Below, piece by piece: positions 3,328 to 10,365 of a stretch of 64,000 bases of DNA. The translations under genes were made by a program, and so were the position numbers. The notes below the pieces were generated by a model, which was not told where the DNA came from, did no database searches, and worked only from the letters and a program-made list of their open reading frames with translations. Within the stretch, counting starts at the first letter, position 1. Each line of letters begins with the position of its first letter. The stretch is from Bacillus subtilis subsp. subtilis str. 168 (lineage in GTDB: Bacteria > Bacillota > Bacilli > Bacillales > Bacillaceae), in assembly GCF_000009045.1 (NCBI RefSeq), contig NC_000964.3, forward strand, positions 4,092,001-4,156,000, given 5' to 3'.

Positions 3328-3357
3328 AAAAGGCGCTTCCTTAGAGGAGCGCCTTTT
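3328..3357. terminator. Bidirectional terminator aldX/yxbD
   Basis: AAAAGGCGCTTCC...GGAGCGCCTTTT inverted repeat. Confidence 0.8.
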
Positions 3358-3835
3358 ATTGTAACTCCTTGACCAAAAGCAATTCATCACGGATAGGTAT
3401 TTTATTATCTGCCAGTAAAGGAATTTCGGGCTTCATCTTTCTGGCCGTCTCGACTGCATTCACAAATAGTCGATCCAACCGGTACCCTCTCTTCTGATAA
3501 AACGCTAATGCATGAATATTATCATTGGTTGTGATCAGTTTTATTTGTTTGATATTTCTCTCTCTGCATGCTTCCTCGGCTTTCTCTAGCAGAGCTGTTC
3601 CGATCCCTTTATTCTCAATGACACTATCCAGCGAAATGATTTCACAGGCATCTTCTTCAAATATGTATGTAATAAGGCCAACAATCTGGTTATCATCGTT
3701 GAGCATTCCATAACCATCTAATTCATCGCAGTTATAAATACCGCTAGAAATAACCATTTGCGGACTGCCCCAGTGTTTTTGAAAAAACGCGGAAACAAGA
3801 TCTTTAGGTACCTGGCATGTCGGAATAATATTCAT
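3356..3835 (-). CDS. yxbD: GNAT-family N-acetyltransferase
   Basis: Acetyl-CoA motif (ENKGIGTALL) and NIHALAFYQKRGY; GGAGG SD. Confidence 0.88.
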   Translation of the reverse strand: MNIIPTCQVPKDLVSAFFQKHWGSPQMVISSGIYNCDELDGYGMLNDDNQIVGLITYIFEEDACEIISLDSVIENKGIGTALLEKAEEACRERNIKQIKLITTNDNIHALAFYQKRGYRLDRLFVNAVETARKMKPEIPLLADNKIPIRDELLLVKELQ

Positions 3836-3914: not shown

Positions 3915-4907
3915 CTAGAACTTATAACTTGTCAAAAGCTGTCTGAATACCAATTGCGTGGATTGATAAGGATCAAAATCTGAATCCTGAGATTGGAAGA
4001 TTTGCTCTGGGGTCAATGTCTCTGCGTTCTCTGATAACGTTTGAATCAGACTTTCCAAATATCCATTTAACTCTGATTTGGACGATTCATGTAGGGATTG
4101 ATGATTTACAGCGAGTTCTCTAAATCTGTTATCACTGATTAATTTTTTTCGAAGAGCTGCTAGCATCAAGTCAAGCCATGCAGGCTGGCCAAATGTAATA
4201 TTTAAAGCTAACGTTGCTTGATCAGATTTGGTGGAGTGCCATAAACCTCTTGGCAAATACAGCATGGTTCCCGGTGTTAAATTAACGATTTCTGCATCTG
4301 GCAGATCCTCTTTTGGCGGATCTCCTTTCCAATATGACTGTAAATCATCAGGATAGTAAGGAGCCTCTGATAAATCATAGTGCTGCATTGGATTGCTCAC
4401 ATTTTCATTCTTGGCAAGCTTCCATGTTTTCTCACCTTGAATTTGAAAAATCAAGTTGGTGTAGGCGTCAAAATGGGCTTTGAATCCCCCGCCATTTTTC
4501 GCCGCGTAAACAATGGCTTTGGAAGAAGTACCCGCAGGCAGTCTTAATTCCGCTTTGAGTTTTTCTATCCACCTTCTGACTTGGGGAATAAATAGGTCGG
4601 TGAAATCAAACTCTAATGCAGCCCCTTTTTCATACCACTCTAAAGCCTCTGCAGGTGACACAAGAAATCTGTCTGTGATCCCTTCAGATTCTTCAATCAC
4701 AGCATCACCAACGACCATGACTGGATTATTGTAGATAGCCAATACGTTTTCTAGCGTTCTAACCTTTTCAAACCCCGGTATGCTTGTAAATCTCTCCACT
4801 TCTCCTCTGGCTACCAAAGGTTTTACAGGCCAATATTCTTCTAAAAACTCACTCATCGTTACAGGACTGATGATAGACTCCAAAACCGATTCGGTTACAG
4901 CACTCAT
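3915..4907 (-). CDS. yxbC: JmjC/cupin 2-oxoglutarate-Fe(II) oxygenase
   Basis: HFD...WH facial triad (AHFDAYTN; PRGLWHST) and LTPGTMLYLPRG. ATG at 4907 follows a GGGAGG SD. Confidence 0.88.
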   Translation of the reverse strand: MSAVTESVLESIISPVTMSEFLEEYWPVKPLVARGEVERFTSIPGFEKVRTLENVLAIYNNPVMVVGDAVIEESEGITDRFLVSPAEALEWYEKGAALEFDFTDLFIPQVRRWIEKLKAELRLPAGTSSKAIVYAAKNGGGFKAHFDAYTNLIFQIQGEKTWKLAKNENVSNPMQHYDLSEAPYYPDDLQSYWKGDPPKEDLPDAEIVNLTPGTMLYLPRGLWHSTKSDQATLALNITFGQPAWLDLMLAALRKKLISDNRFRELAVNHQSLHESSKSELNGYLESLIQTLSENAETLTPEQIFQSQDSDFDPYQSTQLVFRQLLTSYKF

Positions 4908-4971
4908 ATTATCCCTCCCAAAAAAAGTAACTTCACCACAAAGATATAACATTTTTTTCTAAAAGTAAATA

Positions 4972-5000
4972 TTGACAGAATTATCAGAGGATTATAATAT
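4972..5000 (+). promoter_or_regulatory. SigA-type promoter for the peptide-yxbB-asnH transcript, overlapped by a CodY-like box
   Basis: TTGACA at 4972-4977. TATAAT at 4993-4998 (15-bp spacer) or TAATAT at 4995-5000 (17-bp spacer). AATTATCAGAGGATT at 4979-4993 matches the CodY consensus AATTTTCWGAAAATT at 12/15. Confidence 0.65.
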
Positions 5001-5048
5001 TTAGTTGTGCGTGATAGCCTATTTTTTTACAAGGAAGGAGGGAAAAGG

Positions 5049-5117
5049 ATGAAAAAGGCTTATAAGAAACCTCGTCTTTTTGAACTGCGCCGTGCTGTAG
5101 CAGCTGGCGGCCATTAA
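5049..5117 (+). CDS. 22-aa putative RiPP precursor, copy 1: MKKAYKKPRLFELRRAVAAGGH
   Basis: AAGGAGG SD, ATG...TAA, YxxPxL motif. Too short for the ORF track; translated by hand. Confidence 0.82.
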   Translation: MKKAYKKPRLFELRRAVAAGGH

Positions 5118-5166
5118 TCTCATATAGCATTTGACATCTAGTACTCTATTTTAGGAGGGATGCTCA

Positions 5167-5235
5167 ATGAAAAAAGCTTATAAGAAACCTCGCCTTTTTG
5201 AACTGCGCCGTGCTGTAGCAGCTGGCGGCCATTAA
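5167..5235 (+). CDS. 22-aa putative RiPP precursor, copy 2 (identical peptide)
   Basis: AGGAGG SD 8 nt upstream. Differs from copy 1 only at synonymous sites (AAG>AAA, CGT>CGC). Confidence 0.82.
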   Translation: MKKAYKKPRLFELRRAVAAGGH

Positions 5236-5284
5236 TCTCATATAGCATTTGACATCTAGTACTCTATTTTAGGAGGGATGCTCA

Positions 5285-5353
5285 ATGAAAAAAGCTTATA
5301 AGAAACCTCGCCTTTTTGAATTGCGCCGCGCTGTAGCAGCTGGCGGTCATTAA
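5285..5353 (+). CDS. 22-aa putative RiPP precursor, copy 3 (identical peptide)
   Basis: AGGAGG SD. Differs from copy 2 only at synonymous sites (CTG>TTG, CGT>CGC, GGC>GGT). Confidence 0.82.
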   Translation: MKKAYKKPRLFELRRAVAAGGH

Positions 5354-5415
5354 TCTTATCCAAAACGATTAACGTTTGAGGCTATCACGCCAACTTGATA
5401 AGGAGGATGCTGAAG

Positions 5416-6150
5416 ATGATTACGGCTGAAGAATGCAGAACGTACAAAGAATTTGTTGATCTTTACCAATCCTATCTTTACCCCTTGCTTGGCGCCAGAC
5501 TGTCCCGGATGTATTCCCCCAAAAACAAAGTCATTATCGATATGGGCACAGGTCCAGGTTATTTAAGCATTCAGTTGGCTAAAAGAACAAATGCGCACGT
5601 GCATGCTGTCGATATTAACCCGGCCATGCATGAAATCGCTCAAGAAGAAGCTAAAAAAAGCGGAGTAAGCAGCCTGATTTCATTTGATTTGGAAGATGTC
5701 CACCATTTATCTTACGCTGACCAATATGCTGACTTCATCGTCTCCTACTCTTGCCTGCATCATTGGGAAGACGTTGTTAAAGGACTTAAAGAGTGCTATA
5801 GAGTTCTGGCTCCGGGCGGAAAAATTGTCATTTTGGATACATTTAATCCCCAAGGAAGCCATTTAGAGATTATGCGAAAACAAATCAAAGAACCGGAATA
5901 CTTCAGGTTTGTAAGAGAGGCATTTGAAGAAAGTTATTCCTTTGAAGACATTCACCAGTTTGTTCAGGATGCCGGCATTCCCAATTATTCATTAGAAACC
6001 TTTCACTTTTTACCGGAGGATTTTATAGAAAGCTTAGATGAGCTGGAGGATGCTCCCCTGTGGGAACAAAATGATCAAAGTACTGATCATGAAATTGAGT
6101 CTGTCACATGGATGTTAACGATAGAAAAAGAAAAGGAAGGTGCATTGTAA
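5416..6150 (+). CDS. yxbB: Class I SAM-dependent methyltransferase
   Basis: Motif [37 protein letters not shown]; AGGAGG SD at 5401. Confidence 0.9.
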
Positions 6151-6419
6151 TGATCAATGAATCAACTGTTTTATCCAAAAATCCAGAAATGCCATCAAGA
6201 AAATATTTGAAAAGCATTATTATAGAGCCGGGCATCACTTTAAATGAAATGGCATCAGATATTTATAACCATATCGACGGCAAGGTCAGCATACATGATA
6301 TTTGCTCAAAAATCGTCAATGAATATGATGTTGATTATCAAACCTGCTTAGAAGATTGTATGGAGCTGTTTGAGTTGCTTATTGATCATGAAGCAATCAA
6401 AGTTAAGCAGGGGGCATGA
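6150..6419 (+). CDS. yxbA: PqqD-family / RiPP recognition element (RRE) protein
   Basis: 89 aa with the PqqD-type pattern [31 protein letters not shown]...[12 protein letters not shown]; start overlaps the yxbB stop (TAATG). Confidence 0.82.
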
Positions 6420-6422
6420 GAA

Positions 6423-6905
6423 TTGGAAAAACAAAAAGTGCTTGCTTTACCAGACGATGTACATGAGCTGAGTACACACCGTTCTAAATCAATCGTAAAT
6501 TACATCATCACTCTGCTTGCCTTTGCCAAAAAACAAGGATTGACTCATCAAGATATTGTAAGCTGGATTCACGAGCAATATGAGGAAAGAGGATATTATG
6601 ATGAGTGGAGACACATTAACAGCCAACAACCAGTTGGATCATTTGTGGAACTCTTTATAAAAGGAAGACGTTTACTTTATGACAAAATTGAATTGTTTGA
6701 AACAGAAGATAAATATGTCGTAAATACCCACACTTGGTATGAAAAAGAACCTAGTGAGGCCTTTTTTTATTTTGAAATTGATCCCGAAGAATTTTCTGCG
6801 TACGCTTCCATTCTCGCAATCGAAAACGCAAAACGTCTCGGAATTAAAATCGATATTGTAAAAGAAACAGATGTAGAGACAGCTTATATCTATAAACATC
6901 AATAA
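6423..6905 (+). CDS. yxnB: Uncharacterised 160-aa protein
   Basis: TTG-start ORF in the operon between yxbA and asnH; no motif recognised. Confidence 0.8.
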   Translation: MEKQKVLALPDDVHELSTHRSKSIVNYIITLLAFAKKQGLTHQDIVSWIHEQYEERGYYDEWRHINSQQPVGSFVELFIKGRRLLYDKIELFETEDKYVVNTHTWYEKEPSEAFFYFEIDPEEFSAYASILAIENAKRLGIKIDIVKETDVETAYIYKHQ

Positions 6906-6925: not shown

Positions 6926-9169
6926 ATGTGCGGGCTCGCGGGTATTATAAATCTGGCTGCTCCCCGTTCTCAGGAATGTACCTTTCATATATTGAAAGGC
7001 ATGGCAGATGCCATCAGCTATAGGGGACCGGATGATGAACAATATCATATTGATTCCAAAGTCGGCTTTGCATTTCGGCGATTGTCCATTCTTGACCTTG
7101 TAAATGGACAGCAGCCCTTTTTAAATGAGGATGGATCAATCGTCGTTATGGTAAATGGAGAAATTTATAACTATAAAGAACTGAAGGCTTCTTTACACAA
7201 TCATATGTTTAAAACGACATCTGATTGTGAAGTAATTGTTCATTTATATGAAGAAAAAGGGATTGGATTTGTAGACGACATCATCGGAATGTTTTCAATA
7301 GCCATTTGGGACAAAAATAAAAACAAAGTATTTTTAGTTCGTGACCGCTTTGGGATTAAACCGCTTTTTTACACAGAGCTAAAACACGAGCTTATATTTG
7401 CCTCTGAAATAAAATCCCTATTTTCTCATCCTCACTGTCCCCGCCAATTTAATTGGAAAGAAGCACTCTCAGACATTTGGCTAAGCGGGGAAGCAGCCAG
7501 TAATCATAAAGAAACCACTTCCTTTTTTGTAAACATCCAAAATCTCGATGCTGGCCATTATCTCGAAATTAATTTGACAACAAATGAACGAAAAACAGCA
7601 AGCTATTGGTCTTTACAGGATATTTTGCTCAGGCAAGGCTATCGTGAGAATCTCCATCCCGATGACCTGATTGAAGGATATAGAGAACTGCTGGCAGATT
7701 CAGTCCATAGATGTTTACAAAGCGACGTTGAAGTCGGGTTGTTTCTTAGCGGTGGCATTGATTCAGCTGCAGTCGCACATTTTGCTGCAGAAAAACAGGA
7801 TCTCCATACGTTTACAGTATTAAGCCAAAGTACATTTACAAATGAAGATGCAAAATATGCCCATTGGCTGGCTAAAGATTTACACCTTCCAAATCATCAG
7901 GTTCTCTATCAATTAGGGAACGATGAGTTATTACAACCAGAGTCATATAAACATTTGTTATGGATCTGTGAAACACCGTTTTGCGGACCGGAACAATTAT
8001 ATAAGTTTCATTTACATAAGTATGCCAAAGCGATAAGGCCAAACCTGAAAGTCATGCTGACCGGCCAGGGCAGCGACGAATTTAACGGCGGTTACAGCAC
8101 GACACTTTCACCAGCCGAGAACCCAAGTTGGGAAGGATTTATTGAATCGGTCAATACGATGGAGATGAACCGGCTGCATCGGCTGCAGGGAAATATCTTT
8201 AGAGTGTGGGAGGAGCATTTTGGACTTTCTCCTATAAACCTTTCTTATTTAAAGAGCAATGATTCCAGCCAAGCAGATCCTTGGCAATCGTATGTCCTGA
8301 CAAAATACCGTGATCTGCAAATGTATAATTGCTGGCATGAAGATCGGATCGCCGCGGCTAATCATATCGAAAACCGTGTACCGTTCTTGGACCATCGGCT
8401 TGTTGAATGGGTTTGCGGAATACCTGATGGACTCCGTAAAGACTTGTTATGGGATAAGTCGGTATTGCGAAAATCATTAACAAATGAGCTGCATACAAGC
8501 TATACCCACCGGCCAAAGGTTCCTTTTTTCTATGGTAAGGACGTGAGATATACACATAAAATGATGTTTCATCTTCTGAAGAAAAACAATTATCAGCTTA
8601 TAGAGGAGGCCTTCTCTCACAGCGATGCCTCCAGCATAATACAGGTTGAACACATTCATGCCATCATGACATATTTGGAGGATGATCCTGAGTTTACAAA
8701 TTTTGAATTTTTATTAAGACTGGTGAACATGGGACTTTTATCAAAAATGACTAAAGAAACCCCTTCTGTTCAATTAGACATAACCAGCCATTTAGAATCG
8801 ATAACAATAAAAGACTGGCACTCACAGGAAGGTGATATTGCCAGTCGTTTAAATATCTCAGCCAATAAGTGTGAAGGACAAGATATTTTGGCGCTAAACC
8901 CTGGCGTCACTCTGTTAAGGCCGGAAAGCGATAGTGAGCATTGCATCTACATTGCGGAAGAAGGATTTATTCAGTTTATTGTTTCGGAGGAAGACGTCGG
9001 AGCTTGGCTGCATATTCTCTGCGATATTAATGGAAAAGACACACTTCATACGATTTTAGACAGACATGGTGTCAGCCTTGAAGAAGTGGCCAAATATATT
9101 CAAGAAGCCATCGAACACAATATCATTTTGATCAAACAAAAAAATCTGCCAGAAGGAGCATATAGATGA
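6926..9169 (+). CDS. asnH: Glutamine-hydrolysing asparagine synthetase-like amidotransferase with C-terminal extension
   Basis: N-terminal MCGLAG (Ntn Cys), RGPDD, PP-loop LSGGIDS, TGQGSDE; GGGAGG SD. Confidence 0.93.
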   Translation: MCGLAGIINLAAPRSQECTFHILKGMADAISYRGPDDEQYHIDSKVGFAFRRLSILDLVNGQQPFLNEDGSIVVMVNGEIYNYKELKASLHNHMFKTTSDCEVIVHLYEEKGIGFVDDIIGMFSIAIWDKNKNKVFLVRDRFGIKPLFYTELKHELIFASEIKSLFSHPHCPRQFNWKEALSDIWLSGEAASNHKETTSFFVNIQNLDAGHYLEINLTTNERKTASYWSLQDILLRQGYRENLHPDDLIEGYRELLADSVHRCLQSDVEVGLFLSGGIDSAAVAHFAAEKQDLHTFTVLSQSTFTNEDAKYAHWLAKDLHLPNHQVLYQLGNDELLQPESYKHLLWICETPFCGPEQLYKFHLHKYAKAIRPNLKVMLTGQGSDEFNGGYSTTLSPAENPSWEGFIESVNTMEMNRLHRLQGNIFRVWEEHFGLSPINLSYLKSNDSSQADPWQSYVLTKYRDLQMYNCWHEDRIAAANHIENRVPFLDHRLVEWVCGIPDGLRKDLLWDKSVLRKSLTNELHTSYTHRPKVPFFYGKDVRYTHKMMFHLLKKNNYQLIEEAFSHSDASSIIQVEHIHAIMTYLEDDPEFTNFEFLLRLVNMGLLSKMTKETPSVQLDITSHLESITIKDWHSQEGDIASRLNISANKCEGQDILALNPGVTLLRPESDSEHCIYIAEEGFIQFIVSEEDVGAWLHILCDINGKDTLHTILDRHGVSLEEVAKYIQEAIEHNIILIKQKNLPEGAYR

Positions 9170-10365
9170 GCATCTTTTATTCGTTTTCCGCACTTAGGGG
9201 ATTAGCAATGGGGATTTTTTCGCCTATTTGGATTCTTTATCTGATATCTAAAGATTATGATTTCCTTCAGATTGGATTAATGGGAGCGGTACTTGAAATT
9301 GCTAAGCTTATATTTGAAGTTCCTTCCGGCGTTTTTGCTGATCGTTATGGAATTAAAATTTCAATTGCCAGTTCATTCTTTTTCTCCATCCTTACATGGG
9401 CCTTCTTCCCTTTTATCGATTCAGCTGCTATTTGCATACTGGCTATGATCATATGGGCTTTATCAGATTCCTTAATTTCCGGTTCTTTTGAAACTTGGAT
9501 GAGCCGTGTCGCAGGGGAAGATCGATTCGGCAAAGAAATGATGAAAAACACACAATTGCTAATCACTTTTTTAATTATTGGAAGTATTGCCAGCGGGTAT
9601 TTGTATTCATTAAATATCTATTTTCCTTTCCTGCTCGTTATGGTGATCTACTTATTACTATTTATTTGGATGTCTGTATTTATTAAAGTCCCTTCTGTTT
9701 CCGAAACAAATCATGGGGATCAGAACCAACATGATTCGATAAAGATTATCAAAGAAAGTTTAAAAATTATCTTTAACAAAAAAAGGGTTCTTTTAATCGT
9801 CATAGCCGGTTTCTTTACAGCCACAGCCTATGACACAATTTCCCGTTACTGGCAGCCTTTTTTGAGTGATTTAGGCTTTTCAGAAAAGTCACTGGGATAT
9901 ATTTTTGCCCTAGGAGGGTTTACCGCTCTCGTTCTTTTGACATTAACCATCAGGTTCGAAAAGAAGATCGAAAAAAATCCATATCTCGCTTTAACCTCAT
10001 TGGATTCCATGGGCATGGTCATGACTTTTCTATTGTCTAGAGCATTCAGGCCGCTGGGCATTCCATGTACAGCGTTTTTGCTTGCAATTGAAGATATTCA
10101 TCATCCGATCGTAACAAGTTACTTAAATAAGTTTTTCCCCGATTCATACAAGAACACACTTTTCTCGTTAAACTCAGGGGTAGGAGCAATTGGAGAAATT
10201 CTTTCCGGTGTCATTTTCGGCATCATTTCCGCAGCCTTTGGGCTCTCTGCCATGTTTGTTGTTGTAGCTGTATTTCTATTAATCCCTATTATCCTTTATA
10301 CGATAGTGCCTAAGATTAAAGACAATGATATGAAAGTTCAGATTGAAAAATCCCAGCAAGTGTAA
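9166..10365 (+). CDS. yxaM: MFS efflux transporter
   Basis: Many hydrophobic segments; MFS motif A-like GVFADRYGIK; overlaps the asnH stop (ATGA). Confidence 0.88.
   Translation: MSIFYSFSALRGLAMGIFSPIWILYLISKDYDFLQIGLMGAVLEIAKLIFEVPSGVFADRYGIKISIASSFFFSILTWAFFPFIDSAAICILAMIIWALSDSLISGSFETWMSRVAGEDRFGKEMMKNTQLLITFLIIGSIASGYLYSLNIYFPFLLVMVIYLLLFIWMSVFIKVPSVSETNHGDQNQHDSIKIIKESLKIIFNKKRVLLIVIAGFFTATAYDTISRYWQPFLSDLGFSEKSLGYIFALGGFTALVLLTLTIRFEKKIEKNPYLALTSLDSMGMVMTFLLSRAFRPLGIPCTAFLLAIEDIHHPIVTSYLNKFFPDSYKNTLFSLNSGVGAIGEILSGVIFGIISAAFGLSAMFVVVAVFLLIPIILYTIVPKIKDNDMKVQIEKSQQV

What the first reader, a model, noticed from the sequence alone, without database searches (positions are those of the whole stretch)
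5049..5353. The 118-bp triplication is protein-coding: three identical peptides with only synonymous differences
Seen: each unit reads SD-ATG-21 codons-TAA and gives MKKAYKKPRLFELRRAVAAGGH. The 5 nucleotide differences among copies (K3 AAG/AAA, R9 CGT/CGC, L13 CTG/TTG, R15 CGT/CGC, G21 GGC/GGT) are all synonymous. If roughly a quarter of random changes are silent, five of five is about a 1-in-1000 outcome, which points to purifying selection on the peptide. From memory (not verified), this triplication has been described as a 5' leader that stabilises the asnH transcript; ribosomes loaded on these ORFs could also explain that. The ORFs are below common gene-calling cutoffs and absent from the supplied track.
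Basis: partly seen in the sequence, partly recalled or inferred. Interest (0 to 1): 0.9.

Follow-up and report, generated by a model that had tools for sequence, protein, structure and literature searches.

The report
Tandem genes for a conserved mini-peptide
[quoted passage not shown] It always sits next to a peptide-binding chaperone and tailoring enzymes, so the operon looks like an unrecognised peptide natural-product pathway in a model organism.

Summary
Window 5049-5353 holds three ORFs, each with a GGAGG ribosome-binding site, all encoding MKKAYKKPRLFELRRAVAAGGH. The five variable sites are all synonymous.

The strongest evidence is comparative. Ten further distinct loci anchored on the neighbouring gene yxnB carry the same small ORF. 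Their cluster enzymes are only 29-68% identical to the window's where measured. The ORF occurs in 1-4 copies and gives 10 distinct full-length peptides of 22-23 aa. dN/dS is about 0.01 against a locus where synonymous sites are near saturation and the spacers are at random identity. The peptide is the best-conserved product in every locus compared.

Tyr, Arg, Gly and the C-terminal His are invariant, and the Tyr-to-His distance is always 17. Y-x-x-P-x-L matches the lasso-leader motif bound by PqqD-type recognition proteins, in the same -17 to -12 register.

The neighbours are a PqqD-type protein, a JmjC oxygenase, a methyltransferase, a glutamine amidotransferase, a GNAT and an MFS exporter. 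I read this as a new RRE-dependent peptide-modification (RiPP-like) cluster with tandem precursor genes. The chemistry is inferred, not shown.

A covarying long-range RNA helix brackets the ORF array. The published RNA-stabiliser role is compatible with this reading. No paper in the held library makes the connection.

The parts
3356..3835 (-). GNAT acetyltransferase gene (yxbD-like), a probable member of the system
   Evidence: NCBIfam gives RimI-like GNAT hits. In other organisms a domain 41-51% identical to it is fused to, or lies next to, YxnB.
3915..4907 (-). yxbC, a JmjC/cupin Fe(II)/2-oxoglutarate oxygenase transcribed divergently from the peptide genes
   Evidence: Pfam JmjC_2 9.9e-16. 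Identical to PDB 1VRB/7ZCC 'YxbC'. The nearest characterised relatives are the ribosomal histidyl hydroxylases MINA53 and NO66. Found beside the peptide genes in L001, L003, L004, L011 and L024.
4972..5000 (+). Sigma-A-type promoter-like site (TTGACA-17-TAATAT) for the peptide genes and the operon
   Evidence: Consensus scan, 10 of 12 matches. The published operon regulators are SigA, CodY and AbrB (table quoted).
5009..5020 (+). 5' arm (GCGTGATAGCCT) of a long-range helix that brackets the ORF array, close to the predicted 5' end of the transcript
   Evidence: Perfect 12-nt inverted repeat with 5379-5390. 0 of 5000 shuffles reach it. The equivalent bracketing helices in L001, L003 and L004 have different sequences.
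5049..5117 (+). Peptide gene copy 1 (22 aa, MKKAYKKPRLFELRRAVAAGGH); GGAGG at 5037-5041
5167..5235 (+). Peptide gene copy 2 (identical peptide); GGAGG at 5154-5158
5285..5353 (+). Peptide gene copy 3 (identical peptide); GGAGG at 5272-5276
5379..5390 (+). 3' arm (AGGCTATCACGC) of the bracketing helix, between the last peptide stop codon and the yxbB ribosome-binding site
   Evidence: A similar 3' arm (GGGCTATCGCGCC) is visible in the truncated locus L008.
5416..6150 (+). yxbB, a class I SAM-dependent methyltransferase
   Evidence: Pfam Methyltransf_11 7.8e-25. Conserved directly downstream of the peptide genes in L001, L003, L004, L007, L008, L011 and L013.
6150..6419 (+). yxbA, an 89-aa PqqD-family protein and the candidate RiPP recognition element (peptide chaperone)
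   Evidence: Pfam PqqD 1.1e-10. The best NCBIfam and PDB hits are lasso-peptide PqqD chaperones, both below threshold. Called next to yxnB in every related locus whose contig reaches that position; L009 and L010 stop about 50 nt upstream of yxnB.
6423..6905 (+). yxnB, a 160-aa protein of unknown fold that serves as the signature gene of the cluster
   Evidence: No Pfam or NCBIfam hit. 48 cluster representatives among 1.84 billion proteins. AF2 model has pLDDT 94 but no real PDB fold match.
6926..9169 (+). asnH, a glutamine-dependent amidotransferase of the asparagine-synthetase family with an extra C-terminal part beyond residue ~590 of 747 (its last ~190 residues have no significant Pfam domain)
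   Evidence: GATase_7 + Asn_synthase, the latter ending at ORF residue 591. Begins MCGLAG. Passes TIGR01536 (361 > 267) and fails the lasso-cyclase model (190 < 525). Best PDB hit is 7YLZ, a hydroxyamidotransferase. Tail search.
9166..10365 (+). yxaM, an MFS transporter and candidate exporter
   Evidence: 399-aa ORF. MFS_1 in the called genes of identical loci. Conserved in L003, L007, L008, L011 and L024.

Best explanation
The '5' leader triplication' is three tandem, independently translated genes for a 22-residue, very basic peptide.

That peptide is the dedicated substrate (precursor or scaffold) of the enzymes encoded around it. Together they form a RiPP-like pathway that depends on a RiPP recognition element (RRE).

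**Proposed mechanism**
1. At the transition to stationary phase the promoter fires. It is published as SigA-dependent and repressed by AbrB and CodY.
2. Ribosomes load on three strong Shine-Dalgarno sites, so each transcript yields several peptides for each set of enzymes.
3. The PqqD-family protein YxbA binds the N-terminal Y5-x-x-P8-x-L10 motif, which is the lasso-leader recognition motif.
4. YxbA presents the C-terminal A-G-G-H end, always 17 residues after the Tyr, to the tailoring enzymes:
   - YxbC, from the histidyl/arginyl-hydroxylase family;
   - YxbB, a methyltransferase;
   - AsnH, which would activate a carboxylate with ATP and amidate it. The C-terminal alpha-carboxylate is the only carboxylate present in every peptide;
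   - the YxnB/GNAT pair.
5. YxaM exports the product.

**RNA level**
- A conserved helix pairs the 5' end of the transcript with the segment just after the last peptide gene.
- Together with ribosome loading, this plausibly gives the peptide-coding segment its high stability and abundance. That would be the RNA-stabiliser effect already published.

**Shown here:** the ORFs, their purifying selection, the conserved gene neighbourhood, the motif and its register, and the covarying helix.

**Inferred:** translation, binding by YxbA, every chemical step, and export.
For: **1. The ORFs are coding**
- The three ORFs are identical at peptide level and have GGAGG sites.
- Against L001, pS is 0.69 and pN 0.02.
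- The spacers are at background identity: 61% against 57 +/- 4% for shuffles, while the ORF is 83% identical.
- Only the + frame is open and conserved.
- Within L001 the three copies differ at 5-8 sites, all silent.
- The same ORF occurs in 11 distinct loci in all, giving 10 distinct full-length peptides plus one fragment. Named hosts include Anoxybacillus mongoliensis and Alicyclobacillus suci. Every copy whose upstream sequence lies on the contig has a purine-rich SD-like site, and none is disrupted.
- B. subtilis strains carry 2-4 intact copies.

**2. The peptide is the best-conserved product of the cluster**
- Peptide identity across the seven loci compared (one of them the 16-residue fragment) is 59-95%; the enzymes are 29-68% identical.

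**3. The gene context is conserved**
- Peptide + PqqD + YxnB are present wherever the contig reaches them. The methyltransferase, AsnH, JmjC, MFS and GNAT recur, sometimes in a different order.
- YxnB-GNAT fusions tie yxbD into the system.

**4. The recognition motif fits**
- Tyr is invariant, Pro is present in 8 of the 10 distinct peptides, and a hydrophobic or small residue sits at +5.
- YxxPxL occupies -17 to -12 in lasso leaders (PMC10368454).
- Discrete RREs of Bacillota bind YxxP/WxxP motifs (PMC13381572).
- The Tyr-to-C-terminus distance is 17 in all 10 peptides, including the two 23-mers.
- YxbA's best family and PDB hits are lasso PqqD chaperones.

**5. Pointers to the chemistry**
- The L013 peptide has no Asp or Glu, yet that locus keeps AsnH, which leaves only the C-terminal carboxylate.
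- AsnH keeps its N-terminal Cys and its nearest solved relative amidates a natural-product carboxylate.
- YxbC's nearest characterised relatives hydroxylate His in ribosomal proteins.

**6. RNA**
- The bracketing helix is significant and covaries.
Against: - No direct evidence of translation is available here: no Ribo-seq, proteomics or peptidomics.
- No modification has been observed.
- The cluster has no protease gene and the peptide has no obvious leader/core split, so it does not fit the textbook RiPP plan.
- YxbA's similarity to lasso RREs is below curated thresholds (29.7 bits against an 80-bit cut-off; PDB E = 0.046).
- AsnH passes the curated 'asparagine synthase' model and is described in the literature as one of three B. 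subtilis asparagine synthetases. A housekeeping role is therefore not excluded.
- The published function of the triplication (RNA stabilisation) needs no peptide product.
- The bracketing helix is not detectable in the most distant loci (L013, L022-L024).
- The motif register argument is a numerical coincidence until binding is measured.
Confidence: 0.7

Rival explanations
1. Translated cis-acting leader ORFs only. The small ORFs are translated, but their job is to load ribosomes near the 5' end (STAB-SD-like protection) or to couple translation to expression of yxbB-asnH. The peptide itself has no function in trans.
For: - The title of Morinaga 2010 assigns the triplication an RNA-stabilising role.
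- Each unit carries a very strong SD.
- 5'-proximal ribosome binding is an established mRNA stabiliser in B. subtilis (general knowledge).
- Copy number varies from 2 to 4 among strains, as expected for a dosage element.
Against: - A ribosome-loading element needs an SD and a start codon, not a fixed 22-residue sequence.
- Here the amino-acid sequence is held at dN/dS of about 0.01 while the spacers randomise.
- Length, the Tyr-to-His spacing and the C-terminal GGH persist across loci whose enzymes are only about 30% identical.
- There are no Asn codons or other features of amino-acid-sensing attenuation.
- Arrest peptides can be sequence-conserved. That does not explain strict co-occurrence with a peptide-binding PqqD protein and tailoring enzymes.
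Confidence: 0.12
2. A stand-alone small protein. The 22-mer is made and acts unmodified, for example as a cationic antimicrobial, signalling or nucleic-acid/ribosome-binding peptide. The neighbouring enzymes act on something else.
For: - The peptide is strongly cationic (pI 11.1, net charge about +5.6), like many membrane-active or RNA-binding peptides.
- No modification has been demonstrated.
- YxnB was recovered in an RNA-binding-proteome screen (bioRxiv 2025.03.21.644579).
Against: - The peptide's linkage to PqqD and YxnB, with the remaining enzyme genes recurring and sometimes reordered, across distant taxa is hard to explain without a functional link.
- It has no signal peptide or double-glycine leader for export.
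- The invariant C-terminal G-H and the YxxPxL register match RRE-guided modification.
Confidence: 0.1
3. Non-coding structured RNA repeat. The triplication works purely as RNA (a stabiliser or protein-binding platform) and the ORFs are incidental.
For: - Long treated as a 5' leader.
- A real conserved long-range helix exists at its borders.
Against: - The whole leader folds no better than shuffles (z = -0.61 in the window, +0.52 in L001).
- Rfam finds nothing.
- Substitutions between loci fall almost only on synonymous positions, and only the sense frame stays open.
- RNA-level conservation cannot produce that pattern.
- The conserved helix lies outside the ORFs.
Confidence: 0.03

Closest known systems
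Lasso-peptide biosynthesis (precursor A, PqqD-type RRE B1, protease B2, asparagine-synthetase-like cyclase C)
   Same: - A discrete PqqD-family protein is encoded next to an asparagine-synthetase homologue and a small peptide gene.
- The peptide carries YxxPxL at the distance from the reactive residue (-17 to -12) that is typical of lasso leaders.
- YxbA's best family and PDB hits are lasso chaperones.
- An exporter gene is present, and multiple precursor copies occur.
   Different: - There is no B2 cysteine protease. YxnB has no Cys at all and an unmatched fold.
- AsnH keeps a working-looking glutaminase domain and scores far below the lasso-cyclase cut-off.
- In the lasso register the 'core' would be a single residue, so no 7-9-residue macrolactam is possible.
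- One family member has no Asp or Glu at all.
Peptide-derived cofactors and small molecules made on a scaffold peptide with a PqqD-type chaperone (PQQ: PqqA/PqqD/PqqE; mycofactocin: MftA/MftB/MftC)
   Same: - A very short precursor (about 22-30 aa) bound by a PqqD-family chaperone.
- Chemistry focused on invariant C-terminal residue(s).
- The whole peptide is conserved, rather than showing a variable core.
   Different: - No radical-SAM enzyme is present. The tailoring set is a JmjC oxygenase, a methyltransferase, an amidotransferase and a GNAT.
- An MFS exporter suggests a secreted product.
- No dedicated peptidase is present to release a small molecule.
Asparagine-synthetase-like amidotransferases that tailor natural-product carboxylates (e.g. 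PDB 7YLZ hydroxyamidotransferase; C-terminal amidation in thiopeptide pathways, the latter recalled from memory)
   Same: AsnH aligns over residues 1-547 with 7YLZ at E = 1.1e-47. It retains the Ntn-Cys and the synthetase domains.
   Different: - The substrate here is unknown.
- AsnH has an extra C-terminal part beyond the Asn_synthase domain with only weak resemblance to a winged-helix/PqqD-like segment.
- It is annotated and studied as an asparagine synthetase paralogue.
LPP family of Bacillota RiPPs (Popov et al. 2026, PMC13381572)
   Same: A discrete RRE in Bacillota recognises a YxxP leader motif, and a newly found family exists alongside lasso systems.
   Different: - LPP clusters are defined by a SipW-like signal peptidase and an HprK-like kinase, with a 45-residue core.
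- None of these is present here.
- That paper mentions no asparagine synthetase, JmjC, methyltransferase or YxbA.
5' mRNA stabilisers of Bacillus (STAB-SD, 5' stem-loops, ribosome loading near the 5' end)
   Same: - Strong SD sequences sit close to the 5' end.
- The 5' end is paired.
- A stabilising effect of this very repeat has been published (Morinaga 2010, title only).
   Different: - The SDs here start conserved ORFs.
- The 5' end pairs with a site about 360 nt downstream, enclosing the ORFs, rather than forming a local hairpin.

Membership tests
Protein-coding gene under purifying selection | Open frame with a start codon, an SD and a stop codon, kept intact in relatives | tested here: met
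   11 distinct loci and 10 distinct full-length peptides. All are intact, and every copy whose upstream sequence lies on the contig has a purine-rich SD-like site.
Protein-coding gene under purifying selection | Excess of synonymous over non-synonymous change | tested here: met
   pS 0.69 against pN 0.02 (window vs L001). All within-array differences are silent in the window, L001, L003 and L011.
Protein-coding gene under purifying selection | Direct evidence of translation (ribosome footprints, peptide detection) | not testable with these tools
   No Ribo-seq or MS data are accessible. Literature searches found none.
RiPP (ribosomally synthesised, post-translationally modified peptide) cluster with an RRE | Small precursor gene clustered with a RiPP recognition element (PqqD-like) | tested here: met
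   YxbA hits Pfam PqqD at 1.1e-10, 42.1 bits against a 23.4-bit cut-off. A PqqD gene lies downstream of the peptide gene in every locus that shows both. It is directly adjacent only where no methyltransferase intervenes, e.g. L022-L024.
RiPP (ribosomally synthesised, post-translationally modified peptide) cluster with an RRE | Leader motif suited to RRE binding | tested here: met
   YxxP(x)L is present. Tyr is invariant. The motif is documented for lasso and LPP leaders.
RiPP (ribosomally synthesised, post-translationally modified peptide) cluster with an RRE | Physical binding of the peptide by the RRE | not testable with these tools
   Needs pull-down, ITC or fluorescence polarisation. No multimer prediction was available.
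RiPP (ribosomally synthesised, post-translationally modified peptide) cluster with an RRE | Demonstrated post-translational modification of the peptide | not testable with these tools
   Tailoring-type enzymes are co-encoded, but no product data exist.
Lasso peptide | Core with an N-terminal Gly/Ala/Ser/Cys and an Asp/Glu at core position 7-9 for the macrolactam | tested here: not met
   In the lasso register the core would be His22 alone. E12 is not conserved, and L013 and L022 have no acidic residue.
Lasso peptide | B2 transglutaminase-like cysteine protease | tested here: not met
   No such gene occurs in any locus. YxnB has no Cys, no Pfam or NCBIfam hit, and no fold match.
Lasso peptide | Lasso cyclase (asparagine-synthetase homologue matching the cyclase model) | tested here: not met
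   NF033535 scores 190 bits against a 525-bit cut-off. TIGR01536, the Asn synthase model, is passed instead.
PQQ / mycofactocin-type peptide-derived cofactor | Radical-SAM enzyme partnered with the PqqD-type chaperone | tested here: not met
   No radical-SAM gene appears in the window cluster or in any related locus.
Non-coding 5' stabiliser RNA | Conserved or unusually stable RNA structure across the repeat | tested here: not met
   z = -0.61 and +0.52 for the whole leaders. No Rfam hit. Only the flanking long-range helix is conserved.
Non-coding 5' stabiliser RNA | Measured effect on mRNA half-life | not testable with these tools
   Reported by Morinaga 2010 according to its title. The text is not held.

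The most novel reading that the evidence does not exclude
**A RiPP-like pathway with a one-residue 'core'.** Residues 1-21 act as a lasso-type leader or scaffold, bound by YxbA through YxxPxL. The only residue chemically worked on is the invariant C-terminal histidine.

The candidate steps are hydroxylation by a relative of the ribosomal histidyl hydroxylases, methylation, and amidation of its alpha-carboxylate by AsnH.

The end product would be one of two things:
- an exported 22-mer with an exotic C-terminus; or
- after release by a general peptidase, a small histidine-derived metabolite made on a ribosomal scaffold, as in PQQ, mycofactocin or the pearlins.

In evolutionary terms it would be a sister of lasso biosynthesis in which the asparagine-synthetase homologue still works as an amidotransferase.
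Probability: 0.25. Interest if true: 0.9.

Novelty: new variant of a known kind. Interest (0 to 1): 0.8.

Why it matters
- Bacillus subtilis 168 is the reference Gram-positive organism, and its peptide natural products are considered well catalogued. If this reading is right, a complete and deeply conserved peptide-modification pathway has been in plain view for over 15 years, labelled as a '5' leader' plus an 'asparagine synthetase operon'.
- It would give candidate functions to six poorly characterised genes: yxbD, yxbC (structure solved, substrate unknown), yxbB, yxbA, yxnB and yxaM. It would also re-interpret asnH.
- It would define a new peptide family whose members are missed by gene callers. 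Nine of nine non-subtilis peptides are absent from a 15-billion-protein collection.
- It would give an experimentally tractable link between lasso-type leader recognition and other chemistries.
- It is a reminder that 'long 5' leaders' and repeats in bacterial operons may hide tandem precursor genes.

Tried and rejected
- **Rfam** (E-value mode) on 4800-5600 gave no hit.
- **Whole-leader RNA folding** was no more stable than shuffles in the window and in L001. This rejects a structured-repeat RNA.
- **Pfam and NCBIfam** searches with the peptides and YxnB found nothing.
- **YxnB structure.** The single-sequence AF2 model was poor (pLDDT 49). The alignment-based model was good (pLDDT 94), but Foldseek against PDB matched only de novo designs at TM < 0.5. 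The fold gives no functional lead.
- **Word-based homologue search with YxnB** found only 2 clusters. The exhaustive HMMER search was needed to find 48.
- **Locus searches.**
  - The search for related loci with the wide alignment failed because no stretch was conserved enough.
  - The narrower alignment returned only two genomes and did not return B. subtilis itself.
  - The degenerate DNA pattern for the peptide, run against 241 million metagenome records, found only L001 again and a B. subtilis contig. The strict-motif family is therefore rare there.
- **Lasso-peptide membership** was considered and rejected on three defining features (see the membership test).
- **Asn-sensing attenuation** was considered and rejected, because the peptide has no Asn codon.
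- **AsnH C-terminal tail as a second RRE.** There is only a weak DnaD_N hit (E = 0.0067, below cut-off) and a weak BLASTP match to YxbA (E = 0.012). This is left as a lead.
- **Literature.** Ten searches found no paper linking this operon or peptide to RiPPs. Morinaga 2010 could not be read.
- **Assembly gaps.** Two B. subtilis assemblies (L015, L016) have N-gaps inside the repeat and were not used for copy counts.
Full report
**1. What is in the sequence**

Window 5049-5356 is a tandem repeat with a 118-bp period, 2.6 copies and 97% identity.

It contains three ORFs at 5049-5117, 5167-5235 and 5285-5353. Each is ATG + 21 codons + TAA and each encodes MKKAYKKPRLFELRRAVAAGGH. GGAGG lies 7-8 nt before each ATG. 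A TTGACA-17-TAATAT promoter-like site lies at 4972-5000.

The chance of five silent changes out of five is 0.0011 if all substitutions are equally likely. All five are transitions, and on that basis the chance is 0.0052. This is suggestive rather than decisive.

**2. Where it is**

The neighbours identify the B. subtilis yxbD-yxbC / yxbB-yxbA-yxnB-asnH-yxaM region.
- The JmjC protein on the minus strand is identical to PDB 1VRB/7ZCC 'YxbC'.
- Identical YxnB sequences occur on many NCBI assemblies of about 4.1 Mb.
- Irnov et al. 2010 list a 420-nt yxbB leader with 617 cDNAs. [quoted passage not shown]

**3. The decisive evidence is comparative**

YxnB has no Pfam or NCBIfam family, so I used it as the cluster-specific anchor. 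An exhaustive HMMER search found 48 representatives among 1.84 billion proteins. Contigs carrying them, together with a genome scan, gave ten further distinct loci.

| Locus | Source | Copies | Peptide |
|---|---|---|---|
| window | B. subtilis | 3 | MKKAYKKPRLFELRRAVAAGGH |
| L001 | metagenome | 3 | MKKAYKKPRLFELRRAVVAGGH |
| L003 | Anoxybacillus mongoliensis | 2 | MKKEYKKPRAFELRRAVIAGGH |
| L007 | sequencing-run assembly | at least 2 (TTG start) | MKKAYKKPRLFELRRAVVLGGH |
| L008 | sequencing-run assembly | fragment only | ...KPRVFELRRAIVAGGH |
| L011 | metagenome | 2 | MKKAYKKARMFELRRLVVDGGH |
| L004 | Alicyclobacillus suci | 1 | MKKVYKAPRIVEIERAAVVGGH |
| L013 | NCBI assembly GCA_040545495.1 | 1 | MKKKYSSARVVRLRRAVIASGH |
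| L022 | metagenome | 1 seen | MKRKYMKPKALRLRRAYVAGGH |
| L023 | sequencing-run assembly | 1 | MEAKKYVAPKMYRLRRAYAAGGH |
| L024 / L025 | metagenome / sequencing-run assembly | 1 | MENKQYVKPKVVNLVRAGIAGGH |

All copies are intact. Every copy whose upstream sequence lies on the contig has a purine-rich SD-like site.

Selection measures:
- Between the window and L001 the ORFs differ at 11-15 nucleotides, with one amino-acid change. pS is 0.69 and pN 0.02.
- The spacers are at shuffle-level identity, 61% against 57 +/- 4%.
- Only the sense frame is open and conserved.
- In each of the seven loci compared, the peptide is more conserved than any enzyme of the cluster: 59-95% against 29-68%.
- Copies within one array have diverged at silent sites only (dS up to about 0.7 in L001). 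Multi-copy arrays are therefore maintained and are not fresh duplications.
- B. subtilis assemblies show 2, 3 and 4 intact copies, with one extra silent variant. Short-read collapse of the repeat cannot be excluded for the 2-copy cases.

**4. What the peptide looks like**

Alignment of the 10 distinct full-length peptides gives these features:
- Tyr5, Arg15, Gly21 and the C-terminal His22 are invariant.
- Position 9 is always basic, position 13 is Leu or Ile, and Ala16 and Gly20 are nearly invariant.
- Pro8 is present in 8 of 10.
- The two 23-mers have their extra residue at the N-terminus. The distance from the Tyr to the C-terminal His is therefore 17 in every case.

Y-x-x-P-x-L is the conserved recognition motif of lasso-peptide leaders, where it spans positions -17 to -12 (PMC10368454). 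Discrete PqqD-type RREs of Bacillota have been shown to bind YxxP/WxxP motifs (PMC13381572). In that register the '+1' residue here is the C-terminal His itself.

**5. The neighbours**

| Gene | What the searches show |
|---|---|
| yxbA | PqqD family. Best NCBIfam and PDB hits are lasso PqqD chaperones, below threshold. |
| asnH | Intact glutaminase and synthetase domains, starts MCGLAG. Passes the Asn-synthase model and fails the lasso-cyclase model. Nearest solved relative is a natural-product hydroxyamidotransferase (7YLZ). |
| yxbC | Nearest characterised relatives are the ribosomal histidyl hydroxylases MINA53 and NO66. |
| yxbB | Class I SAM methyltransferase. |
| yxaM | MFS transporter. 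|
| yxnB | Confidently predicted fold with no PDB match. Fused or adjacent to a GNAT that is 41-51% identical to window ORF 3356-3835, which pulls yxbD into the system. |

The peptide gene, PqqD and YxnB are found together wherever the contig reaches them. The other genes recur, sometimes in a different order. In L024 the order is PqqD-YxnB-MFS-AsnH-JmjC.

The L013 peptide has no acidic residue, yet AsnH is present in that locus. The only carboxylate common to all family members is therefore the C-terminal one.

**6. Most likely mechanism**

Inference is marked as such.
- *Shown:* the ORFs are real genes under strong constraint, embedded in a conserved cluster that contains an RRE.
- *Inferred:*
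  - they are translated from their own SDs and give several precursor molecules per transcript;
  - YxbA binds the YxxPxL segment and presents the A-G-G-H end to the tailoring enzymes;
  - candidate steps are His or Arg hydroxylation (YxbC), methylation (YxbB), amidation of the C-terminal carboxylate (AsnH) and acetylation (YxbD, with YxnB as partner);
  - YxaM exports the product.

The published AbrB/CodY control and transition-state induction would suit a secreted stationary-phase peptide. From general knowledge, several other B. subtilis peptide antibiotics are AbrB-controlled.

I put 0.95 on 'coding and selected for its peptide' and about 0.7 on the full substrate/precursor model.

**7. 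RNA level**

A perfect 12-nt inverted repeat (5009-5020 / 5379-5390) pairs the start of the transcript with the segment between the last peptide stop and the yxbB SD.

Equivalent helices with different sequences bracket the arrays in three other loci:
- L001: 13 bp.
- L003: 15 bp, with one G-U pair.
- L004: 13 bp.

They share a G-R-TAGC core with compensatory changes around it.

| Locus | Shuffles reaching the helix, Watson-Crick only | With G-U allowed |
|---|---|---|
| window | 0/5000 | 65/2000 |
| L001 | 2/5000 | 33/2000 |
| L003 | not comparable (longest Watson-Crick run is 8 bp) | 10/2000 |
| L004 | 0/5000 | 8/2000 |

L011 has only a 9-10-bp candidate that is not significant once G-U pairs are allowed. 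The most distant loci lack a detectable helix.

This helix, rather than the repeat body, is the conserved RNA feature. The body folds no better than shuffles. It is a good candidate for the stabilising or processing determinant.

**8. Comparison with what is known**

- The system works most like lasso-type, RRE-guided biosynthesis. It is not a lasso system: it has no B2 protease, no cyclase-type C protein and no possible macrolactam (see the membership table).
- It also resembles PQQ and mycofactocin in having a tiny, fully conserved precursor with an invariant C-terminus. It lacks a radical-SAM enzyme.
- It is distinct from the recently described LPP family.
- No paper in the held library links this operon, these genes or this peptide to RiPPs. 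Subscription literature is not covered, so earlier description elsewhere cannot be excluded.
- The B. subtilis peptide is called in at least one NCBI/UniRef record. Its relatives are not called anywhere.

**9. Verdict**

I rate it a new variant of a known kind: an RRE-dependent RiPP-like pathway of a new family with tandem precursor genes. Interest is high (0.8) because it sits in a model organism, reassigns a published 'leader' and an 'asparagine synthetase' operon, and can be tested directly.

Noticed in passing
window 5009-5020 and 5379-5390 (also L001 3304-3316/3667-3679, L003 8654-8668/8927-8941, L004 1499-1511/1638-1650): A long-range helix encloses the whole peptide-gene array. It covaries between loci around a shared G-R-TAGC core, and its 5' arm lies at the predicted start of the transcript. 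It may be the real stabiliser or processing site (for example for RNase III) behind the published effect.
   Followed up: partly
window 3356-3835 (-) and L004 2655-3677, L009 539-1012, L011 8834-9334: YxnB homologues are often fused to, or lie next to, a GNAT domain that is 41-51% identical to the window's yxbD-like ORF. This gene-fusion link suggests that YxnB and the acetyltransferase work together.
   Followed up: partly
window 8750-9166 (AsnH C-terminal tail): AsnH extends beyond the Asn_synthase domain (which ends near residue 590 of 747). The last part of that tail aligns weakly with the PqqD-like helix region of YxbA (BLASTP E = 0.012), and the last ~190 residues give a sub-threshold winged-helix (DnaD_N) hit. 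It could be a second, fused peptide-recognition domain.
   Followed up: partly
L015-L021 (B. subtilis assemblies), repeat region about 1000-1440: Copy number is 2, 3 or 4 in different assemblies. Two assemblies have runs of N inside the repeat, and several metagenome or read-assembly contigs (L006, L007, L008) end inside it. The repeat evidently breaks short-read assembly, so copy counts from draft genomes are unreliable.
   Followed up: partly
window 5150-5169 and 5268-5287 versus 5399-5418: The ribosome-binding region of copies 2 and 3 (AGGAGGGATGCTCAATG) resembles that of yxbB (AGGAGGATGCTGAAGATG), whereas copy 1 has a different one (AAGGAGGGAAAAGGATG). This hints at where the duplication junctions lay.
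   Followed up: no
literature: PMC11426337, PMC9319509: YxbA protein was detected only in an ssrA (tmRNA) mutant, and yxbB transcript levels respond to tmRNA status. This could be indirect, or it could reflect ribosome behaviour on the three small ORFs.
   Followed up: no
L013 4882-4909: In the most distant single-copy locus the peptide gene is followed by a perfect 11-bp GC-rich hairpin instead of the long-range helix. This is the classic arrangement downstream of RiPP precursor genes. The same locus has an ABC transporter in place of the MFS gene, and no JmjC gene was seen.
   Followed up: no
Genome-contig scan: The YxnB motif scan of 185,579 species representatives returned only Anoxybacillus mongoliensis and Alicyclobacillus suci. 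It returned neither B. subtilis itself nor its close sister species. Either the region is masked in that collection or the cluster is patchily distributed even within the B. subtilis group.
   Followed up: no
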